Shown in pieces: positions 3,042-61,098 of a stretch of DNA of 64,000 nt. The position numbers were made by a program, and so were the translations under genes. Position 1 is the first letter of the stretch. Each line of letters starts with the position of its first letter. The notes beneath the pieces are model-generated. The model did no database searches. It saw only the letters and a program-made list of their open reading frames with translations, and had not been told where the DNA came from. The DNA lies in the sequence record MH791404.1, one strand, 5' to 3'.

Positions 3042-3914
3042 ATGGCATTGAATTATGTAGAAGAACCAGTAGAAAAAGAAAATAAACCAAAAAAGTCTAC
3101 TGCGAAAAAACAAAAAGAACTTGACCTCGGGGTAATCAACGAAATTGTTGATGCTAATACCGCACCAGAAGCGAAAGCGAAAATTCAAGCATATGCTAAG
3201 GAATGTGGTTTTAAAATTAGCAAGTCTAATACTTCGGTTGACGATATGATCGTTAAACTCCTTGAAATGGCGGACGCCAAAGAGAATGAAAAACTGGACC
3301 TTGCACCGGAACCGAAAGAAAAAACCCCTTTTGTCGAACCAGTTGTAGTCGATGACGAATTCGACAATGTAGATGAGGTTATTGAACTTGGTGTGGTTGA
3401 ATCAATCAAAATTGATGATGGGGTGGTTAATATCAATACTCCCAACGATGTTAAAATTGAATTCACTCCACCGAAACAACCAGAATATATTGATTCTTCT
3501 GGGTTTAAAACTCTTGACGAATTAATTGAAGATGAAAAGAAGTTCGTTAAAGAAAAAATGAAATTTGAAATTNNNNNNNNNNNNNNNNNNNNNNNNNNNN
3601 NNNNNNNNNNNNNNNNNNNNNNNNNNNNNNNNNNNNNNNNNNNNNNNNNNCAAGATACCCAAGAACCGGATTTGACTTATGGTTTCAAGCCGAAAGTAAA
3701 TCTGATTGGGGCTGTTGGTAACCAATACCTCAATTGCCCGTATTGGATTCTTGATTGGATCCTTGAGAAAGGACCGTCTTGGAAGAGTATTATTGATACT
3801 CATGAACGCGAACCGGATAAAGCACTTCTGAAAACAGTTCTTTATTACATCCAGATTAATGGTAGTGTGACATTGCGCGAGAGTCGTAATTCTCGTTTCC
3901 ATACCATTTACTAA
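3042..3914 (+). CDS. inh: Inhibitor of prohead protease (Inh); contains N gap 3573-3650
   Basis: KAKIQAYAKECGFKISK near the N-terminus and YYIQINGSVTLRESRNSRF at the C-terminus match T4 Inh; CTAAATA at 3009 upstream. Confidence 0.85.
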   Translation: MALNYVEEPVEKENKPKKSTAKKQKELDLGVINEIVDANTAPEAKAKIQAYAKECGFKISKSNTSVDDMIVKLLEMADAKENEKLDLAPEPKEKTPFVEPVVVDDEFDNVDEVIELGVVESIKIDDGVVNINTPNDVKIEFTPPKQPEYIDSSGFKTLDELIEDEKKFVKEKMKFEIXXXXXXXXXXXXXXXXXXXXXXXXXXQDTQEPDLTYGFKPKVNLIGAVGNQYLNCPYWILDWILEKGPSWKSIIDTHEREPDKALLKTVLYYIQINGSVTLRESRNSRFHTIY

Positions 3915-54146: not shown

Positions 54147-54239
54147 GCGTGAGTGGCGAAGTTGGTTGAAACGCATCGGACTTAAAATCCGATACTGCAT
54201 AATGGCACATCGTGGGTTCGATTCCCACCTCACGCACCA
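54147..54239 (+). tRNA. tRNA-Leu(TAA)
   Basis: GCGTGAG acceptor stem, TCGGA-CT-TAA-AA-TCCGA, long variable arm, GTTCGA, encoded CCA. Confidence 0.92.
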
Positions 54240-54294
54240 AATACGAGATGATAAACCCAAATTCCTTTTTGTTGAATGAGCTTTTGAACGTAAA

Positions 54295-54480
54295 ATGAGT
54301 TTATCATCTCCAAAATTCAAAATTCAATATGAGATGCTTAATATGAACGTATACATCAGAAATTACATGCGCGATGTCCTTTGGAGTAGTATCTTCAATG
54401 AAGATCACTGTAAAGGTAAATGTGTTAAGATTATGCGTGGTAAACATTTGAAGCCTTTCTATCAAAAATCGAGATATTAA
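54295..54480 (+). CDS. Possible small hypothetical protein
   Basis: 61-aa ORF ending 1 nt before the next start; start uncertain. Confidence 0.35.
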   Translation: MSLSSPKFKIQYEMLNMNVYIRNYMRDVLWSSIFNEDHCKGKCVKIMRGKHLKPFYQKSRY

Positions 54481-54481
54481 A

Positions 54482-54871
54482 ATGAAAGTGAAGCTTGGTG
54501 CCTATAACCTTAATGAAAAAAGTTCATTGGTTAATACGAATGGTGTAAAATTCATTTTGAATGAACAAGTTATAGATGAGTTTTCTAAAAAACTACCTAT
54601 TCTAATCAATTTTGGTCAAAAATGTTTTAACATCGATAATGTCAGAGATACACCAGATCCGGTTGGTATTCTAAATTCCATAGAAACTTACAAGAAAGAT
54701 AATATCATTATTGTTACTGGTGATATAGAAATAACCAATGACAAAGTGTATGATGTTCATGGATGCCTTCCTTCTTTTTGTGTTCGGTCTCTGGCTAATG
54801 GTGACGGTGATACTTATAAAGTTATCGAGATCGTTGCGTGGGATATGGAAATATATGAAGGTTTATCATGA
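54482..54871 (+). CDS. Hypothetical protein
   Basis: 129 aa; ATGA-coupled to the next ORF. Confidence 0.7.
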   Translation: MKVKLGAYNLNEKSSLVNTNGVKFILNEQVIDEFSKKLPILINFGQKCFNIDNVRDTPDPVGILNSIETYKKDNIIIVTGDIEITNDKVYDVHGCLPSFCVRSLANGDGDTYKVIEIVAWDMEIYEGLS

Positions 54872-55266
54872 ATAAACATGATATTCATCTCATTGGTATT
54901 AGTAAGTTTATCAAGAAAGGTCTTACTGTGGTTCAATCAAGTTTGGTCTTCAAACAAACCAGCGAAGAATGGAAAAATATCCATGGTGTTGATGTAGACA
55001 AAATTTATTGCTATATTAACAATGATGGTAAGGATATCTATGCAATTGGTAGACTTAGATCCTGTTGTGGACCTTGGTTGAGTGTTAGTTGTCGGTCTCT
55101 CCATAAAAAAGGTTATATAGCATTTGACTTTAACGATGAAATTGAGATACCATATGGTTCGGGGATGAAAACTGCTTATAGGGTATTGTTTTCTGACACC
55201 CCTAAATACGAGTATGATGAAGAAGCCAGACATCCAGTCGCTTACTTCGAAAAATACTTCAAATAA
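54868..55266 (+). CDS. Hypothetical protein
   Basis: 132-aa ORF. Confidence 0.7.
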   Translation: MNKHDIHLIGISKFIKKGLTVVQSSLVFKQTSEEWKNIHGVDVDKIYCYINNDGKDIYAIGRLRSCCGPWLSVSCRSLHKKGYIAFDFNDEIEIPYGSGMKTAYRVLFSDTPKYEYDEEARHPVAYFEKYFK

Positions 55267-55310
55267 AAGTTAAACATCCTTTCTAACTATGATATGATGT
55301 TTATATAAAT
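55261..55310 (+). promoter_or_regulatory. 50-bp promoter cassette upstream of tRNA-Arg, copy 2
   Basis: Duplicate of 54095-54144. Confidence 0.75.
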
Positions 55311-55311
55311 T

Positions 55312-55388
55312 GCGCTGTTAGCTCAGTTGGATAGAGCAACGTTCTTCTAAAGCGTGGGTCACTGGTTCGAATCCAGTACGGCGCACCA
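55312..55388 (+). tRNA. tRNA-Arg(TCT)
   Basis: ACGTT-CT-TCT-AA-AGCGT anticodon arm; GGTTCGAATCC; CCA. Confidence 0.95.
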
Positions 55389-55472
55389 CGGGATGTGGTG
55401 AAATTGGCAGACACACTAGATTTAGGTTCTAGCGCCATAGGCGTGACGGTTCGAGTCCGTCCATCCCGACCA
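55389..55472 (+). tRNA. tRNA-Leu(TAG)
   Basis: CTAGA-TT-TAG-GT-TCTAG; variable arm; CCA; abuts tRNA-Arg. Confidence 0.95.
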
Positions 55473-55473
55473 A

Positions 55474-55549
55474 GCGGGTAAGGTGTTTATGGATACATGC
55501 AAGCCTTCCAAGTTTGAGTAGACCGGATCGTTACCGGCTACCCGCTCCA
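55474..55549 (+). tRNA. tRNA-Gly(TCC)
   Basis: GCGGGTA acceptor stem; CAAGC-CT-TCC-AA-GTTTG; atypical T loop (GATCGTT); CCA. Confidence 0.85.
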
Positions 55550-55560
55550 AGATTTAAAAT

Positions 55561-55630
55561 TGATGTGTTACAGCTATCAGCTCACCGTTGAAAGAATACG
55601 GATAAGTCGGCTCGACTAAAGAACATATCA
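55561..55630 (+). ncRNA. Cloverleaf-like structured spacer (tRNA-like ncRNA or degenerate tRNA)
   Basis: TGATGTGTT/AACATATCA closing stem around three short hairpins; no canonical T loop or CCA. Confidence 0.4.
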
Positions 55631-55633
55631 TTT

Positions 55634-55710
55634 GGCCCCTTAGCTCAGTTGGTTAGAGCAACCGACTCATAATCGGTTGGTCACTGGTTCGAGTCCAGTA
55701 GGGGCCACCA
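55634..55710 (+). tRNA. tRNA with CAT anticodon, Ile2 (lysidine)-type
   Basis: GGCCCCTTAGCTCAG...ACTCATAATC...AGGGGCCACCA closely follows E. coli tRNA-Ile2 (ileX) as recalled. Confidence 0.85.
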
Positions 55711-56074
55711 AATANNNNNNNNNNNNNNNNNNNNNNNNNNNNNNNNNNNNNNNNNNNNNNNNNNNNNNNNNNNNNNNNNNNNNNNNNNNNNNNNNNNNNN
55801 NNNNNNNNNNNNNNNNNNNNNNNNNNNNNNNNNGATATTATATCGAATTCCATATCTAAACTATCTGTTATTTATTGGTCCGATACACCTCCTTGGATAA
55901 AAGAAAATAAGATATCATGGTGTGTTGATAAAGAACGGTTGATAGATTATAATAATAAGAGCTGTTAAGAGTCCCATCGCTTCTAAAAATATCAAAAGGG
56001 ATGTTGATGCGCGTATGTAGCCGGGTTATAATGACCAAGATTCATGAAGGGTGAAAGACCACCCTAAATATCAT

Positions 56075-56152
56075 AGCGGGGTGGAGAAGTCAGGAGTTCT
56101 CGCCAGACTCATTATCTGGAAATCGGTGGTTCAAATCCACCTCCCGCTTCCA
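56075..56152 (+). tRNA. tRNA-Met(CAT), initiator-like body
   Basis: AGCGGGGTGGAG, CCAGA-CT-CAT-TA-TCTGG, GGTTCAAATCC, CCA; CTAAATA at 56064-56070. Confidence 0.88.
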
Positions 56153-56153
56153 A

Positions 56154-56229
56154 TGGCGTGTAGTTCAGTAGGTAGAACAGCGGACTGTTAATCCGTATGT
56201 CGTGGGTTCGAATCCCACCTCGCCAGCCA
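56154..56229 (+). tRNA. tRNA-Asn(GTT)
   Basis: GCGGA-CT-GTT-AA-TCCGT; GGTTCGAATCC; GCCA. Confidence 0.95.
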
Positions 56230-56235
56230 AATTCT

Positions 56236-56326
56236 GGATGTTCGGCTACGATGGCGGTGTAGCGGCGGACTGTAAATCCGTTCCCTCTGGGTAAACAAGT
56301 TGGTTCGAATCCAACAGCATCCACCA
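56236..56326 (+). tRNA. tRNA-Tyr(GTA)
   Basis: GCGGA-CT-GTA-AA-TCCGT; long variable arm; CCA. Confidence 0.92.
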
Positions 56327-56480
56327 AATAGAAGAAGTTAGAAGACGTTCTGATAAAATCCTCGGAGACGATGCCCCCTTGCGGTTTTAAACCGTTACGG
56401 ATAAGCACGGGGTAATCCAAATCAACCATTATAGGGATGTGGTCATCTGGTATGTAAAATACAGTTGGTTTGGAACTTTT

Positions 56481-56556
56481 CGGTGATTAGCGCAGTTGGT
56501 AGCGCGTCTGGTTTGGGACCAGAGGGTCACAGGTTCGAGTCCTGTATCACCGACCA
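56481..56556 (+). tRNA. tRNA-Pro(TGG)
   Basis: CGGTGAT acceptor stem; TCTGG-TT-TGG-GA-CCAGA; CCA. Confidence 0.95.
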
Positions 56557-56834
56557 CTTAGCACAAAGAACGGGTAACGACGTATGCCCCGGAATAAGCC
56601 AGCCATAGAGAATCTGGATATCCTGAAACGTGCCTTTAGGTTTCAGGCGGGATTGGTAGTATAAAGACGATATGGTAACTACTCCTTGACAAGCAGGGTT
56701 GAACTTGAGGTAACTGTCCTTTACCAAACAACGAACAGATGGACAAAATCAGTTGAACGTCCTTCCTCCTTGTGATAGCATGTCAACTACATTAGGATAT
56801 AATCACAGTCTAACGATCCTGATTATAATCCGCT

Positions 56835-56910
56835 GCCGAATTAGCTCATCTGGTAGAGCACAGCCTTTGTAACGCTGGGGTGGTCCGTTCGAGTCGGACA
56901 TTCGGCACCA
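56835..56910 (+). tRNA. tRNA-Thr(TGT)
   Basis: GCCGAAT acceptor stem; CAGCC-TT-TGT-AA-CGCTG; GTTCGAGT; CCA. Confidence 0.92.
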
Positions 56911-57170
56911 AATTTTGGATTCTCGTCAATAGTCCGGTCTATGAGAATCGACGCTTTAAGTAGCCCACCGGTATTTGTAAAAAATCTAGTGAAAGCTAGA
57001 AAATAAAAACCGAACCCCGACCTCTCCCATTACTCAAATGGTGATGTAGGTTCCTTCCCTGTAATAAGGTTCTAGTCCGTGACGGGTAAAAGGTTACATA
57101 GGGAGTATTGCTTGTGAATGACCACTGATTCAAGCCATCACATAAGCTCGTCCGTTATGACGTTAAATAT

Positions 57171-57351
57171 AAGGCTTAGATTCCCATAAGGGCCTAAGCG
57201 TAAAAGTAACGAGCAAGCNNNNNNNNNNNNNNNNNNNNNNNNNNNNNNNNNNNNNNNNNNNNNNNNNNNNNNNNNNNNNNNNNNNNNNNNNNNNNNNNNN
57301 NNAAAAGGCTTAGATTCCCATAAGGGCCTAAGCGTAAAAGTAACGAGCAAG
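57171..57351 (+). repeat. 47-nt direct repeat flanking an N gap
   Basis: AAGGCTTAGATTCCCATAAGGGCCTAAGCGTAAAAGTAACGAGCAAG at 57171-57217 and 57305-57351; gap 57219-57302. Confidence 0.85.
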
Positions 57352-57452
57352 ACCGTTTTGCAGGCGTAGCCCATTGGGGTGATGATGTTTGTATGTTGGG
57401 CTCGGATAGCCAATGCTATTAAGTCCGGTGATGGTGCGACCGGATCGATTCT

Positions 57453-57521
57453 AGGGTGTTAGTATAGTGGTATTATGCCGGATTCCAAATCCCTGGGGTT
57501 CGAATCCTCAACGCCCTGCCA
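57453..57521 (+). pseudogene. Truncated tRNA-Trp(CCA)
   Basis: Acceptor, D and T arms and CCA intact; only TCCC lies between the anticodon loop and T stem (69 nt total). Confidence 0.7.
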
Positions 57522-57742
57522 ATTTACGGAACCACATCAACAAGTATGTGCCTTGGTGGTTCGACCTGCTTTGCAGCCGCACATGAAGCTAAAACTTAAA
57601 AAGAGAGGTTGTATATGTCACCGCTAAACGCAAGCCGTTAGGACGTAAAGGTAAAAATAGTGTTTTTGTAAATGGTTATACCAATAATGGTATTCCGGTT
57701 TTATGTAATGTATTTTATCAGTTTGAAACAAATGGTATTCCA

Positions 57743-57937
57743 TTGGATATTCTGATAGAGAAATTTTATAATTCCGGTTATATTATTGATTGGGTTTCTT
57801 TCGTTAATGATGCTTTCAAGATCGGATGGAAGAAAGAAACTGTAATAAAAAAGATAAAGTATGCATTTGATGATATTGAGATAAATGATTCAAATGAAAT
57901 ACTAAACCGTGTGATTAAATACATAGAAAGCCTGTAA
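57743..57937 (+). CDS. Hypothetical protein (true start uncertain; frame open from 57593)
   Basis: ETNGIPLDILIEKF...IDWVSFVNDAFKIGWKKETVIKKI; no ATG in frame. Confidence 0.55.
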   Translation: MDILIEKFYNSGYIIDWVSFVNDAFKIGWKKETVIKKIKYAFDDIEINDSNEILNRVIKYIESL

Positions 57938-57947
57938 GGAATGATAT

Positions 57948-58199
57948 ATGGGTAAGACATTTCGTCGTAAAAATGAAAAACATCTGGACAGTTGGTATGG
58001 TGATGAACTTAAAGTGAATCGGGATCTGGGAGATAAATATCCTAGTTATCCAGAATCGGGTGTCAAAGATCGTTATAATACATTGAGTCGTCAGCGAGAT
58101 CGTAAATTGAAACATGATATCATGCACGGTAATCACGATGTTTTTGTTGATGATGATTACGAAATGAAAAAGGCTAACGCCGGTTATCAATATAGTTAA
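57948..58199 (+). CDS. Hypothetical protein (MGKT.RRK family of T4-type phages)
   Basis: 83 aa; AAGGA RBS. Confidence 0.75.
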   Translation: MGKTFRRKNEKHLDSWYGDELKVNRDLGDKYPSYPESGVKDRYNTLSRQRDRKLKHDIMHGNHDVFVDDDYEMKKANAGYQYS

Positions 58200-58209
58200 G
58201 ATTTTAAAG

Positions 58210-58449
58210 TGTACGCGCCCCAAGAGTGGCGCAGCGGCGTCAAACAATACGAGTCAAGGGTAAAGGTGATACCCTGTATTGTCACTAGACGAAAAGAGAC
58301 CATATTGCCTCGATTATGGTCCCCGTTTTAAAGAGGGTGGTGTGACCTACCACTATCACAAGGTTGTTGTCTGACACCAAAGACAACGTTCGGCAACGGG
58401 GACTTTATCTTGCTTTGACTGGCTTGATATAGTCCCCGTTTTTCTTTTT
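58210..58449 (+). ncRNA. Highly structured non-coding leader ending in a terminator
   Basis: Eight stems seen by eye, ending in AACGGGGACT/AGTCCCCGTT plus T run; no ORF. Confidence 0.65.
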
Positions 58450-58467
58450 ATTAACGGAGAATTTGAT

Positions 58468-58653
58468 ATGTTGACTGGAATTTTTATTGTGTATTTGATT
58501 GGTGTTCTGGTATTCATTACCGCATTTGTGATTACCGATCATCAAGACCGAGAAGAGGATAGGACCCCTACTTTTAAAGAAGTTATGGATTATCTTTCTG
58601 TATCAGCAATTTGGCCCGTTTTGATTGCTATGTCGATTATTCGTAGTCTTTAA
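58468..58653 (+). CDS. Small membrane protein
   Basis: 61 aa with two hydrophobic segments; GGAG RBS. Confidence 0.75.
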   Translation: MLTGIFIVYLIGVLVFITAFVITDHQDREEDRTPTFKEVMDYLSVSAIWPVLIAMSIIRSL

Positions 58654-58930: not shown

Positions 58931-59485
58931 ATGATGATATCGCCAAACAGTTTCTTTAGAGACGAATATGTTAGTATGGTAAACAAAAAATTAAAATTAT
59001 TTAAAAGTTCCGAATATCTAGACAGGAGTCGATTGATGATATCTCCTGATGCATTCCAACAAGAGTTGGGGACTATATGCTTGGATATGGGAAGACAAAC
59101 AGGAAAAACATCTGCTGCTATTATGTTGTTAGAAGAACATAAAGACGCTTTGTATGTTGTTCACAACCATCCTACTATCAGATCTATATTGTCGGTGGCA
59201 CCACATTTAAAAGACCAAGTGTTGTCAATTAGCGACTTTGTTAATAGGTTTTATTCTCGTGGTACATACAATCATGTTATTCATGGAAGTAGGATTGAAA
59301 AATATAGTATGATCATTATTGATGAACCCTATTTCACATGTACCAATGGTCAGAGACAATTCACTAATCGTAGTAGTTGTTCATATCACTTGGATGGTGG
59401 TAAACAAATAAATACCACATACGGTCTAATTAGTTATGCCGCATTCAGGATGGAATCATTAATCGTTAAATTAGGAATGCAATGA
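58931..59485 (+). CDS. P-loop NTPase-like protein
   Basis: Walker-A-like MGRQTGKT and Walker-B-like IIIDE. Confidence 0.6.
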   Translation: MMISPNSFFRDEYVSMVNKKLKLFKSSEYLDRSRLMISPDAFQQELGTICLDMGRQTGKTSAAIMLLEEHKDALYVVHNHPTIRSILSVAPHLKDQVLSISDFVNRFYSRGTYNHVIHGSRIEKYSMIIIDEPYFTCTNGQRQFTNRSSCSYHLDGGKQINTTYGLISYAAFRMESLIVKLGMQ

Positions 59486-60246: not shown

Positions 60247-61098
60247 ATGAAAATGAAATTTAGTGAATTCGTTCAATTGGAAGAAAAATTGATGGTATTC
60301 GGAAAGAAGGCATACCCTAAGTTTAACAACGTCTTGATCTTGGCTGGTGGGGCTGGATCTGGGAAGGGGTTTGTTACTTCTAAACTTGTTGGTCTAGAAG
60401 GTATTACCCTAGACGTAGACCGTGTAAAAGAGCTTGCTATGGCTTCCACAAAGCTAGCAGGGCGCATTAAAGCAGAAACCGGGCACGATATATCCAAGTT
60501 TGACTTGAAGAAGCCAGAAAACGTTTCTACTCTGCATAGCCTTCTATCTGATGTATACAAGACAACCAAGAACATGGATAAACGTGTTTTTAATGGTGTA
60601 TTGGCTGCACCAGAGGATCGTAAACCTAATTTGATCTTTGACGTTACCCTTAAAGATATGGGTAAGATGGCTCAAATTGCAAAACAGGTTCGTGAACTAG
60701 GTTATAACAAGGAAAACGTTCATATCGTGTGGGTGATGAATGATATCAACGTTGCTATGAAACAAAACGCCGAACGTTCCCGTACTGTACCGGTTGAAAT
60801 TCTTGTTGCAACCCATGAGGGTGCAAGTATGACCTTCAAAAACCTAATGGCTATGGGTGAAGGTGCCCGGAGTTATGCCGATGGTGATTGGTATATTGCA
60901 TTCAATAAAATTGGTGTTGACTCTTCTATTGTTAAATCTGGTAAAGGTGGTTCTTATGTTAAAGAAGCAAACTACATAAGAGTTAAACAACAGGGTAAAG
61001 CTCCGATGAAAGCAACTGAACTTGATAAACAGATTGTGAATAAGATTTCTGATTATATTCCAAACCCAGAAACATGGGCTATGGTAATGAAGAAATAA
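60247..61098 (+). CDS. P-loop kinase-like protein with capsid-targeting-like N-terminus
   Basis: LAGGAGSGKGF Walker A; LIFDVT; N-terminus MKMKFSEFVQLEE; CTAAATA at 60210. Confidence 0.7.
   Translation: MKMKFSEFVQLEEKLMVFGKKAYPKFNNVLILAGGAGSGKGFVTSKLVGLEGITLDVDRVKELAMASTKLAGRIKAETGHDISKFDLKKPENVSTLHSLLSDVYKTTKNMDKRVFNGVLAAPEDRKPNLIFDVTLKDMGKMAQIAKQVRELGYNKENVHIVWVMNDINVAMKQNAERSRTVPVEILVATHEGASMTFKNLMAMGEGARSYADGDWYIAFNKIGVDSSIVKSGKGGSYVKEANYIRVKQQGKAPMKATELDKQIVNKISDYIPNPETWAMVMKK

What the first reader, a model, noticed from the sequence alone, without database searches (positions are those of the whole stretch)
58210..58467. Attenuator/riboswitch-like leader with mutually exclusive terminator and antiterminator
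Seen: a 240-nt ORF-free leader with nested stems (CGTC/GACG, ACAATAC/GTATTGT, AGGGT/ACCCT), further hairpins (GCGCC/GGCGC, GACCATA/TATGGTC, GTGGT/ACCAC, GTTGTCT/AGACAAC) and a terminator. The terminator's 5' arm AACGGGGAC (58395-58403) has two perfect 9-nt partners: GTCCCCGTT at 58432-58440 (terminator, followed by a T run) and at 58319-58327 (upstream, overlapping the GACCATA hairpin). Inference: a two-state switch controlling read-through into the small membrane-protein gene, or a stand-alone ncRNA. I recognise no known aptamer.
Basis: partly seen in the sequence, partly recalled or inferred. Interest (0 to 1): 0.75.

Follow-up and report, generated by a model that had tools for sequence, protein, structure and literature searches.

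The report
Knotted small RNA ending phage tRNA array
The region is not a conserved on/off switch. It encodes a previously undescribed, tightly folded RNA of about 235 bases that closes the tRNA gene array of a group of T4-like Aeromonas phages, and its function is still unknown.

Summary
The window is an Aeromonas T4-like phage (100% identical to phage Assk, Emmerichvirinae).

Comparison with four sequence lineages shows one conserved RNA, about 58215-58449 on the + strand. The lineages are window/CC2, phage 65/avDM6, Aswh_1/ZPAH1, and a new metagenomic lineage. The RNA has:
- five hairpins;
- a helix (AGCGG/CCGUU) that closes a three-way junction;
- four long-range pairings, three of them with compensatory changes;
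- an intrinsic terminator whose apical loop pairs with a bulge 160 nt upstream.

In the model-fitted alignment, 94.6% of cells are paired, against 37-45% in slid controls, and 38 of 80 pairs show double changes. No Rfam family matches. A model of this RNA finds nothing in the T4 rnaC/rnaD locus.

The proposed antiterminator is above chance only in the window (p about 0.01). It is weaker in CC2 and at chance in phage 65 and Aswh_1. The membrane gene it was thought to control is missing in two lineages. The upstream GTCCCCGTT copy is P3's 3' arm plus the junction-closing strand.

Best reading: a stand-alone structured ncRNA made at the end of the tRNA operon, a positional analogue of T4 RNA C/D. 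Its function is unknown and is probably binding of a partner.

The parts
54147..57518 (+). tRNA array, the upstream part of the same gene island. It holds 10 ARAGORN tRNAs plus one weak tRNA-like (anticodon CCA) at 57453-57518.
   Evidence: In relatives the module below follows the last tRNA by 56-102 nt.
57948..58199 (+). Gene for an 83-aa basic protein (CC2_361 homologue, PHROG 1774, unknown function). It lies directly upstream of the RNA in every lineage.
   Evidence: A promoter-like site at 57876-57903 has a counterpart at the matching position of phage 65.
58215..58232 (+). P1 hairpin (GCGCC / GGCGC).
   Evidence: Fully compensatory replacements: GGGGUA/UACCCC, GUCCCG/CGGGAC, GGGGU/ACCCC.
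58233..58237 (+). J helix, 5' strand (AGCGG). It pairs with 58323-58327 and closes the three-way junction that holds P2 and P3.
   Evidence: Predicted independently in the MFE. The second pair is G.U, A-U or U-A across lineages.
58238..58291 (+). P2 long hairpin:
- P2a 58238-41/58288-91, invariant
- P2b 58244-50/58276-82
- bulge 58251-56
- P2c 58257-62/58270-75
- apical loop 58263-69, with an invariant GGUG.
   Evidence: P2b and P2c are 100% paired, with 5 double-change pairs each. The internal loop AA / CACUA is invariant.
58292..58297 (+). Junction strand AAAAGA. It is part of the invariant core 58281-58297.
   Evidence: Invariant except for one G/A change in lineage D.
58298..58321 (+). P3 hairpin (GACCAUA / UAUGGUC).
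   Evidence: Compensatory in CC2, phage 65, Aswh_1 and lineage D. G.U pairs fit the + strand only.
58308..58311 (+). PK1 5' strand (CCUC in the P3 loop). It pairs with GAGG 58333-58336.
   Evidence: A U-A to C-G double change in 6 of 12 rows (pair 121-146).
58323..58327 (+). J helix, 3' strand (CCGUU). This is the conserved part of the upstream GTCCCCGTT copy.
58333..58336 (+). PK1 3' strand (GAGG).
58337..58353 (+). P4 hairpin (GUGGU / ACCAC). Loop bases GACC 58344-47 form PK2 with GGUU 58362-65.
   Evidence: P4 has 2 double-change pairs. PK2 is 100% paired, with C-G changing to U-A in lineage D (GAUC/GAUU).
58362..58365 (+). PK2 3' strand (GGUU).
58366..58387 (+). P5 hairpin (GUUGUCU / AGACAAC). 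Loop bases CACC 58375-78 are complementary to GGUG 58265-68, a putative kissing loop.
   Evidence: P5 has 6 of 7 pairs with double changes and is 100% paired. Both kissing-loop strands are invariant in all lineages, so the pairing is inferred, not shown.
58395..58449 (+). Intrinsic terminator:
- stem 58395-58409 / 58426-58440
- apical stem 58412-14 / 58421-23
- apical loop 58415-20
- U tract to 58449.
Loop bases UGACU 58416-20 pair with the P2 bulge AGUCA 58252-56 (PK3).
   Evidence: The stem sequence is different in Aswh_1 and lineage D but remains a hairpin with a U tract. The apical stem covaries (GCU/GGC, CCA/UGG, UCU/AGA). PK3 pair 59-237 is C-G in 6 rows and U-A in 6.
58468..58653 (+). 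Neighbouring gene for a 61-aa protein with two hydrophobic segments (CC2_362 homologue). It is not part of the conserved module.
   Evidence: It is 33% identical to the phage 65 homologue. It is absent after the RNA in Aswh_1/ZPAH1 and lineage D.

Best explanation
Window 58215-58449 (+) encodes a discrete, compactly folded non-coding RNA of about 235 nt. It is the last element of the phage's tRNA transcription unit.

Shown:
- A fold conserved in four lineages: P1, a three-way junction (J, P2, P3), P4, P5 and a terminator hairpin.
- Tertiary pairings stitch these together: PK1, PK2 and PK3 with covariation, and an invariant GGUG:CACC loop pair.
- The invariant unpaired core lies around P2a.
- The module is always [83-aa ORF + RNA + terminator], placed after the tRNA array.

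Inferred:
- The RNA is made by read-through from the tRNA or 83-aa-gene promoter(s).
- It is ended constitutively by its own intrinsic terminator, whose loop docks on the P2 bulge.
- The terminated molecule is therefore the functional product.
- It acts as a stable structured RNA that binds a partner (protein, ribosome/tRNA-related factor or small molecule) through the invariant core.
- It is a positional analogue of T4 RNA C/RNA D and a small counterpart of the tRNA-island RNAs ROOL and GOLLD.

The 9-nt 'antiterminator' match in this genome is a by-product: the J 3' strand plus the P3 3' arm happen to resemble the terminator's 3' arm.
For: - Structure: 94.6% of cells are paired against 37-45% for slid partners, 38 of 80 pairs show double changes, and 0 of 500 shuffles reach this (model-fitted alignment). 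On an independent MAFFT alignment the figures are 81.3% against 39-49%, with 29 double-change pairs. With three lineages only, 94.3% are paired.
- Strand: G.U pairs and the U tract fit the + strand only.
- Conservation: the RNA is about 75% identical in nucleotides between the window and Aswh_1, where the adjacent protein is 31% identical in amino acids.
- Composition: GC is 49% in the RNA against 36% in the flanking genes.
- Coding: no ORF is conserved.
- Terminator: its loop pairs with the P2 bulge, with covariation, and its stem is different in sequence in three lineage groups but is always a hairpin with a U tract.
- Downstream gene: it differs between lineages or is absent.
- Position: the module follows the last tRNA.
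- Synteny with T4: gene 1, then tRNAs, then small RNAs, then e.
- Literature: T4 RNA C/D are of unknown role (PMC3014915). ROOL and GOLLD lie near phage tRNA islands (PMC12286853).
Against: - There are no expression data, so the 5' end, the stability and even the existence of a discrete species are inferred.
- There are only four full lineages, all from one phage subfamily or close metagenomic relatives, so some covariation events may be single events.
- The kissing loop and P2a never vary, so those pairings are untested.
- No partner or target was found. There is no complementarity in the 64-kb window to the invariant core or to the 18-nt upper part of the terminator hairpin.
- The RNA sits 18 nt before a gene in this genome, and the alternative pairing is thermodynamically strong here. 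A regulatory role in this lineage therefore remains possible.
Confidence: 0.55

Rival explanations
1. Riboswitch or attenuator. A sensor domain closed by helix J decides whether CCCCGUU pairs with the terminator 5' arm (read-through) or leaves it free to form the terminator. This would control the 61-aa membrane-protein gene and the genes after it.
For: - In the window the alternative duplex is -18.0 kcal/mol, reached by 1% of shuffles.
- In transcripts cut before the terminator 3' arm, AACGGG (58395-58400, six of the nine arm bases) pairs with its upstream partners at probability 0.7-0.9; the same pairing is seen in phage 65.
- The layout resembles OFF riboswitches: the 3' strand of the junction-closing helix is shared with an antiterminator.
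- The terminator ends 18 nt before the gene.
- The junction nucleotides are invariant.
Against: - The duplex is not above chance in CC2 (p 0.14), phage 65 (p 0.50) or Aswh_1 (p 0.63), and it sits at a different site in lineage D.
- Changes in the upstream copy follow P3, not the terminator arm.
- The membrane gene is missing in two of the four lineages, yet the fold is kept.
- P4, P5 and the terminator loop are part of the conserved fold.
- No Rfam aptamer matches.
Confidence: 0.13
2. A cis-acting 3' element of the 83-aa-gene / tRNA-operon transcript. The structure would stabilise or process the upstream RNA, or be the binding site through which the basic 83-aa protein controls its own mRNA.
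For: - The RNA is always immediately downstream of the 83-aa gene. A translated ORF (that gene or a micro-ORF) ends within 15 nt of P1 in every lineage.
- The protein is basic, with an arginine-rich N-terminus.
- There is a shared promoter-like site upstream of the gene.
Against: - A plain terminator hairpin suffices for 3' protection, so a knotted fold of about 190 nt with an invariant core is far more than that needs.
- The RNA is much better conserved than the protein (75% nt against 31% aa).
- A homologue of the protein in Aeromonas phage 1233 has no such RNA next to it.
Confidence: 0.2
3. A self-processing or catalytic RNA (new ribozyme), or a put-like RNA that modifies RNA polymerase so that it reads through the terminator(s) that follow.
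For: - The architecture is multi-pseudoknotted, with an invariant unpaired core.
- Downstream genes have no obvious promoter of their own. In Aswh_1 two terminator-like hairpins precede the next gene.
Against: - No known ribozyme or antitermination family matches.
- No cleavage-site signature was recognised.
- The idea rests on architecture alone.
Confidence: 0.08

Closest known systems
Phage T4 RNA C and RNA D (species 1 and 2 RNAs; rnaC, rnaD)
   Same: Small non-coding RNAs encoded at the distal end of the tRNA cluster of a T4-type phage, between gene 1 (dNMP kinase) and lysozyme e. They are on the same strand as the tRNAs, and their function is unknown (PMC3014915, PMC9697503).
   Different: - No sequence or structure similarity: the covariance model finds nothing in the T4 locus.
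- The T4 RNAs abut tRNA-Arg and carry tRNA-like ends (a T-arm-like hairpin in rnaC, a CCA-like 3' end in rnaD).
- This RNA is larger and pseudoknotted, is separated from the tRNAs by a protein gene, and ends in an intrinsic terminator.
- The neighbouring genes share no PHROG families.
ROOL and GOLLD RNAs
   Same: Phage-encoded 'ornate' RNAs with several pseudoknots, typically next to tRNA islands. They have no known protein partner or function (PMC12286853).
   Different: - They are 500-800+ nt, against about 235 nt here.
- Their Rfam models do not match.
- They form homo-oligomeric cages, which has not been tested here.
- They are widespread, whereas this RNA was found only in Emmerichvirinae-type Aeromonas phages.
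Transcription-terminating (OFF) riboswitches, e.g. three-way-junction aptamers with a P1 helix shared with an antiterminator
   Same: A three-way junction closed by a short helix, invariant junction nucleotides, tertiary loop contacts, and an intrinsic terminator just before a gene. In the window the closing helix's 3' strand can pair with the terminator 5' arm.
   Different: The alternative pairing and the downstream gene are not conserved. The terminator loop and two further hairpins belong to the conserved fold. No known aptamer matches.
3'-UTR-derived bacterial sRNAs
   Same: The RNA shares the terminator of an upstream protein-coding transcript and lies directly after a stop codon.
   Different: It is much larger and globular rather than a seed plus a terminator. 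No target complementarity was found in the window. The processing site is unknown.

Membership tests
Any Rfam 15 family | Covariance-model score at or above the family's gathering threshold | tested here: not met
   The only matches at or above gathering score in the window are tRNAs elsewhere. At E<=10 the region gives only noise of 11-17 bits.
Terminator/antiterminator riboswitch or attenuator | Conserved structured sensor domain directly upstream of an intrinsic terminator | tested here: met
   The terminator is present in all lineages.
Terminator/antiterminator riboswitch or attenuator | Mutually exclusive antiterminator pairing conserved across relatives | tested here: not met
   Best upstream duplex with the terminator 5' arm: window -18.0 (p 0.01), CC2 -14.0 (p 0.14), phage 65 -11.9 (p 0.50), Aswh_1 -8.6 (p 0.63), lineage D -14.7 at another site (p 0.04).
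Terminator/antiterminator riboswitch or attenuator | Consistent downstream regulated gene | tested here: not met
   The membrane gene is present in window/CC2 and 65/avDM6 (33% aa identity). It is absent in Aswh_1/ZPAH1 and lineage D.
Terminator/antiterminator riboswitch or attenuator | Ligand- or condition-dependent termination | not testable with these tools
   Needs single-round transcription or in-line probing.
Leader-peptide attenuator | Short translated leader ORF whose translation governs alternative hairpins | tested here: inconclusive
   A conserved 8-10 codon micro-ORF with an SD ends 6-8 nt before P1 in phage 65, avDM6, Aswh_1/ZPAH1 and L031. It is absent in the window, CC2 and lineage D, and no conserved alternative hairpins were found.
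T4 RNA C / RNA D | Encoded at the distal end of the tRNA cluster between gene 1 and e | tested here: met
T4 RNA C / RNA D | Sequence or structure homology to rnaC or rnaD | tested here: not met
   No hit of model R1 in T4 66000-76000 at E<=10.
T4 RNA C / RNA D | tRNA-like elements (T-arm, CCA-type 3' end) and processing from the tRNA precursor | tested here: not met
   Neither ARAGORN nor the Rfam tRNA model gives a signal in 58200-58450. The 3' end is an intrinsic terminator. Processing itself is not testable here.
ROOL / GOLLD | Match to the family model; size 500-800+ nt | tested here: not met
   No Rfam match. The length is about 235 nt.
ROOL / GOLLD | Phage-encoded, next to a tRNA island, multiple pseudoknots | tested here: met
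   PMC12286853.
ROOL / GOLLD | Homo-oligomeric assembly | not testable with these tools
   Needs native gel, SEC-MALS or cryo-EM.
Rho-independent terminator | GC-rich hairpin followed by a U tract on the transcribed strand | tested here: met
   Stem 58395-58409/58426-58440 with arm duplex -20.8 kcal/mol, then UUUCUUUUU. Equivalent hairpins with a U tract are present in all lineages.

The most novel reading that the evidence does not exclude
This is the founding member of a new class of compact, multiply pseudoknotted phage RNAs tied to tRNA islands. Its invariant core would form a specific pocket or active site. Examples: an RNA that sequesters a host factor or small signalling molecule during infection, or a new ribozyme acting on the tRNA-operon transcript. 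The conserved micro-ORF that ends at P1 in some lineages would couple its folding to translation.
Probability: 0.2. Interest if true: 0.85.

Novelty: new variant of a known kind. Interest (0 to 1): 0.62.

Why it matters
T4-type phages are among the best-studied viruses. [quoted passage not shown]

This is a second, unrelated and structurally far more elaborate RNA at the same kind of locus. It has a well-supported fold with testable tertiary contacts. At about 235 nt it is a tractable model for two questions:
- why phages place complex RNAs beside their tRNA genes, the same open question as for ROOL and GOLLD;
- how such RNAs fold, which could be studied by structure determination.

It also corrects a plausible but unsupported riboswitch call.

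Tried and rejected
- **Rfam.** Scans at gathering and at E<=10 on 64 kb, 1.9 kb and 261 nt found nothing.
- **Homology to T4 rnaC/rnaD.** Model R1 gave no hit. No PHROG families are shared between the two neighbourhoods.
- **More distant homologues.**
  - Four pattern scans of IMG/VR, one of metagenomes and one of GTDB genomes returned only the known phages, one phage-65-like contig and chance matches. Those with variable stems failed the model; the two from the first scan showed no similarity beyond the 17-mer in an alignment. L039 lies inside a 645-aa ORF.
  - blastn with the Aswh_1 copy found no new groups.
  - Lineage D came instead from homologues of the neighbouring 83-aa protein.
- **Trans targets.** The window holds no complement of the invariant core or of the 18-nt upper part of the terminator hairpin (58409-58426), allowing up to 3 mismatches.
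- **MotA-type or sigma-70 promoter hidden in the conserved terminator loop.** TGCTT-type sites are not enriched or positioned consistently and the spacing is wrong. Rejected.
- **Coding potential.** No frame stays open across lineages.
- **Minus-strand 'terminators' at P3**. These are the reverse complement of P3 plus the A-rich junction. No minus-strand gene is nearby.
- **Link to the 83-aa protein.** Phage 1233 has the protein but no RNA.
- **Not done.** Whole genomes of other T4-like Aeromonas phages (Aeh1, 44RR, phiAS4/5) were not scanned with the model. Absence outside Emmerichvirinae therefore rests on the pattern and blastn searches only.

Full report
**Identity of the window.** The 801 bases around the finding are 100% identical to Aeromonas phage Assk and 96% identical to phage CC2 (genus Ceceduovirus, subfamily Emmerichvirinae, Straboviridae). 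About 69% similarity extends to phages 65, 65.2 and avDM6. About 75% similarity extends, over the non-coding part only, to Aswh_1 and ZPAH1 (genus Ishigurovirus) (taxonomy). None of these records annotates anything under the element.

**Position.** The finding lies between an 83-aa gene (57948-58199) and a 61-aa gene (58468-58653), both on the + strand. It is downstream of a tRNA array at 54147-57518.

**Check of the observation.**
- The region folds at -89.5 kcal/mol, with z = -4.2 against dinucleotide shuffles.
- Short mechanical ORFs exist, but no frame stays open in all relatives.
- GC content is 49%, against 36% in the two flanking genes.

**Relatives.** Three lineages came from GenBank phages.
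- Searching with the neighbouring 83-aa protein gave five more protein clusters. Their contigs all carry the element.
- They add a clearly more divergent fourth lineage, 'D' (loci L022-L030; 125-133 bits against 220-283 for the others), and a truncated fifth (L031).
- Pattern scans of IMG/VR, JGI metagenomes and GTDB genomes found nothing further. Neither did blastn with the most divergent GenBank copy.
- Within the sensitivity of these searches, the family was detected only in Emmerichvirinae-type Aeromonas phages.

**Structure.** For example, P1 is GCGCC/GGCGC, GGGGUA/UACCCC, GUCCCG/CGGGAC or GGGGU/ACCCC, and P5 is GUUGUCU/AGACAAC, GUCUCUC/GAGGGGC, GGCGUCC/GGGCGUC or GCAUAAC/GUUAUGC. Comparison revealed five further pairings:
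1. Helix J, 58233-37 with 58323-27, closes a three-way junction around P2 and P3. RNAfold predicts it on its own. Its second pair is G.U, A-U or U-A in different lineages.
2. PK1 joins the P3 loop CCUC to GAGG 58333-36. One pair switches from U-A to C-G.
3. PK2 joins the P4 loop GACC to GGUU 58362-65. One pair switches from C-G to U-A in lineage D.
4. PK3 joins the P2 bulge AGUCA 58252-56 to the apical loop of the terminator, UGACU 58416-20. It is U-A in three lineages and C-G in two.
5. GGUG 58265-68 in the P2 apical loop is complementary to CACC 58375-78 in the P5 loop. Both are invariant, so this pairing is only inferred.

**Pair counts.**

| Alignment | Cells paired | Slid controls | Pairs with double changes | Shuffles reaching this |
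|---|---|---|---|---|
| Model-fitted, A7 | 94.6% | 37-45% | 38 of 80 | 0 of 500 |
| MAFFT, structure-blind, A8 | 81.3% | 39-49% | 29 of 80 | 0 of 500 |
| MAFFT, three lineages only, A3 | 94.3% | 39-49% | 24 of 67 | 0 of 500 |

The MAFFT alignment A8 is partly out of register for lineage D. G.U pairs and the U tract fix the + strand as the functional strand. The unpaired blocks 58235-58245 and 58281-58297 are invariant, except for one G/A change.

**The terminator belongs to the fold.** Its stem sequence is entirely different in Aswh_1 and in lineage D, yet it is always a long hairpin followed by a U tract. Its small apical stem covaries (GCU/GGC, CCA/UGG, UCU/AGA). Its loop keeps the motif that pairs with the P2 bulge. 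This argues that the terminated molecule is the product, and that termination is not merely one branch of a decision.

**Test of the switch.** I computed the best duplex between the terminator's 5' arm and everything upstream, and compared it with 500 dinucleotide shuffles.

| Lineage | Best duplex (kcal/mol) | p |
|---|---|---|
| window | -18.0 | 0.01 |
| CC2 | -14.0 | 0.14 |
| phage 65 | -11.9 | 0.50 |
| Aswh_1 | -8.6 | 0.63 |
| lineage D (a different site, the P3 5' arm) | -14.7 | 0.04 |

- The CC2 copy already differs by one base, because P3 covaried.
- The upstream 9-mer is a composite: the last three bases of P3, one spacer base, and the J 3' strand. Its changes track P3 and J, never the terminator.
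- The gene the switch was supposed to control is present after the RNA only in the window/CC2 and 65/avDM6 lineages (33% amino-acid identity). In Aswh_1/ZPAH1 and lineage D the next gene is the CC2_363 homologue.
A lineage-specific effect on termination therefore cannot be excluded.

**Context.**
- The module [83-aa ORF + RNA + terminator] always closes the tRNA array. In Aswh_1 the ORF starts 56 nt after tRNA-Asp, and in lineage D 102 nt after tRNA-Trp. In the window one more small ORF intervenes.
- A promoter-like site with an extended -10 sits at matching positions upstream of the ORF in the window (57876-57903) and in phage 65.
- The 83-aa protein is basic, belongs to PHROG 1774, and has no known function. 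It is far less conserved than the RNA (31% amino-acid identity between the window and Aswh_1). It also occurs without the RNA in Aeromonas phage 1233.
- The broader gene order is dNMP kinase (gene 1), tRNA array, small RNA, then hoc, tk and lysozyme. This mirrors T4's gene 1, tRNAs, rnaD, rnaC, then e.
- There is no homology to the T4 RNAs, and the neighbouring genes share no PHROG families.

**Comparison with known systems.**
- No Rfam family matches.
- By position, the closest known things are T4 RNA C and RNA D, whose roles are unknown (PMC3014915; PMC9697503).
- By kind, the closest are ROOL and GOLLD: ornate, pseudoknotted phage RNAs near tRNA islands, also of unknown function (PMC12286853). 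Those are two to four times larger and unrelated in sequence.
- The element resembles an OFF riboswitch in layout, but it fails two defining tests: a conserved alternative pairing and a consistent regulated gene.
- A large catalogue of candidate structured RNAs in viruses exists (PMC10690425). Its main text mentions no Aeromonas phage or T4-like element and no supplement was available, so I cannot say whether an unnamed entry covers this locus.

**Verdict.**
- The switch interpretation is not supported as a conserved property.
- The 'stand-alone ncRNA' alternative is supported.
- Confidence that this is a genuine, conserved, structured RNA on the + strand is high, about 0.9.
- Confidence in the mechanism I commit to is moderate, 0.55. 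That mechanism is a constitutively terminated, stable RNA that acts through a bound partner.
- The main rival is a cis role for the upstream transcript (0.2), followed by a lineage-specific riboswitch (0.13).
- I rate it a new variant of a known kind: orphan structured RNAs of phage tRNA islands.

Noticed in passing
window 57219-57302 (N run); repeats at 57171-57217 and 57305-57351: An 84-base run of N is present in the source GenBank record itself (Assk, marked UNVERIFIED). It is flanked by an exact 47-nt direct repeat, so it is most likely an assembly or scaffolding gap and not biology.
   Followed up: partly
window 57453-57518: A weak tRNA-like gene (Rfam 33.8 bits, anticodon CCA, shortened variable region) that ARAGORN does not call. 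Lineage-D relatives (L023, L025, L028) have a normal tRNA-Trp(CCA) as the last tRNA before the 83-aa gene.
   Followed up: partly
L002 3288-3320; L031 1207-1233; also L003, L005, L006 just upstream of the RNA: A conserved micro-ORF of 8-10 codons (M, Y/F/I, R, E, E, D or NEG, W, F, stop) with its own Shine-Dalgarno. Arg is coded by AGA, CGC or CGT and Asp by GAT or GAC, which points to selection on the peptide. Its stop codon lies 6-8 nt before P1. It is absent in the window, CC2 and lineage D, where the 83-aa gene's own stop lies 10-15 nt before P1.
   Followed up: partly
window 58395-58440 versus L002 (phage 65): The terminator hairpin is 46/47 identical between the window and phage 65. The rest of the RNA is roughly 78% identical, and the flanking proteins are 74% and 33% identical. 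The cause is unexplained: extra constraint or recombination.
   Followed up: no
window 56911-57742: A stretch of about 830 nt after tRNA-Thr with no ORF longer than 91 aa on either strand. It contains the N gap and the weak tRNA-like gene. No Rfam match other than that tRNA.
   Followed up: no
L023 162-473 and 992-1609; L025 1618-2313; L028 191-670: Inside the tRNA islands of the metagenomic relatives there are genes with weak Acb2/Tad1-hairpin and HNH_3 hits and with NADAR and T5orf172 hits. The island is mosaic and may carry counter-defence and homing-endonuclease-type genes.
   Followed up: no
window 58931-59485 and 60247-61098: Two P-loop proteins lie downstream of the RNA. One is a 184-aa protein with Walker A- and B-like motifs (seen by eye; PHROG 2586). 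The other is a 283-aa protein with a Zeta_toxin/AAA_33-type kinase domain. A DUF5856 protein lies between them. All are conserved in every lineage.
   Followed up: no
L003 3221-3361 (Aswh_1): Where the membrane gene is missing, Aswh_1/ZPAH1 have about 140 nt of extra non-coding sequence. It ends in a second terminator-like hairpin (3323-3340) just before the next gene.
   Followed up: no
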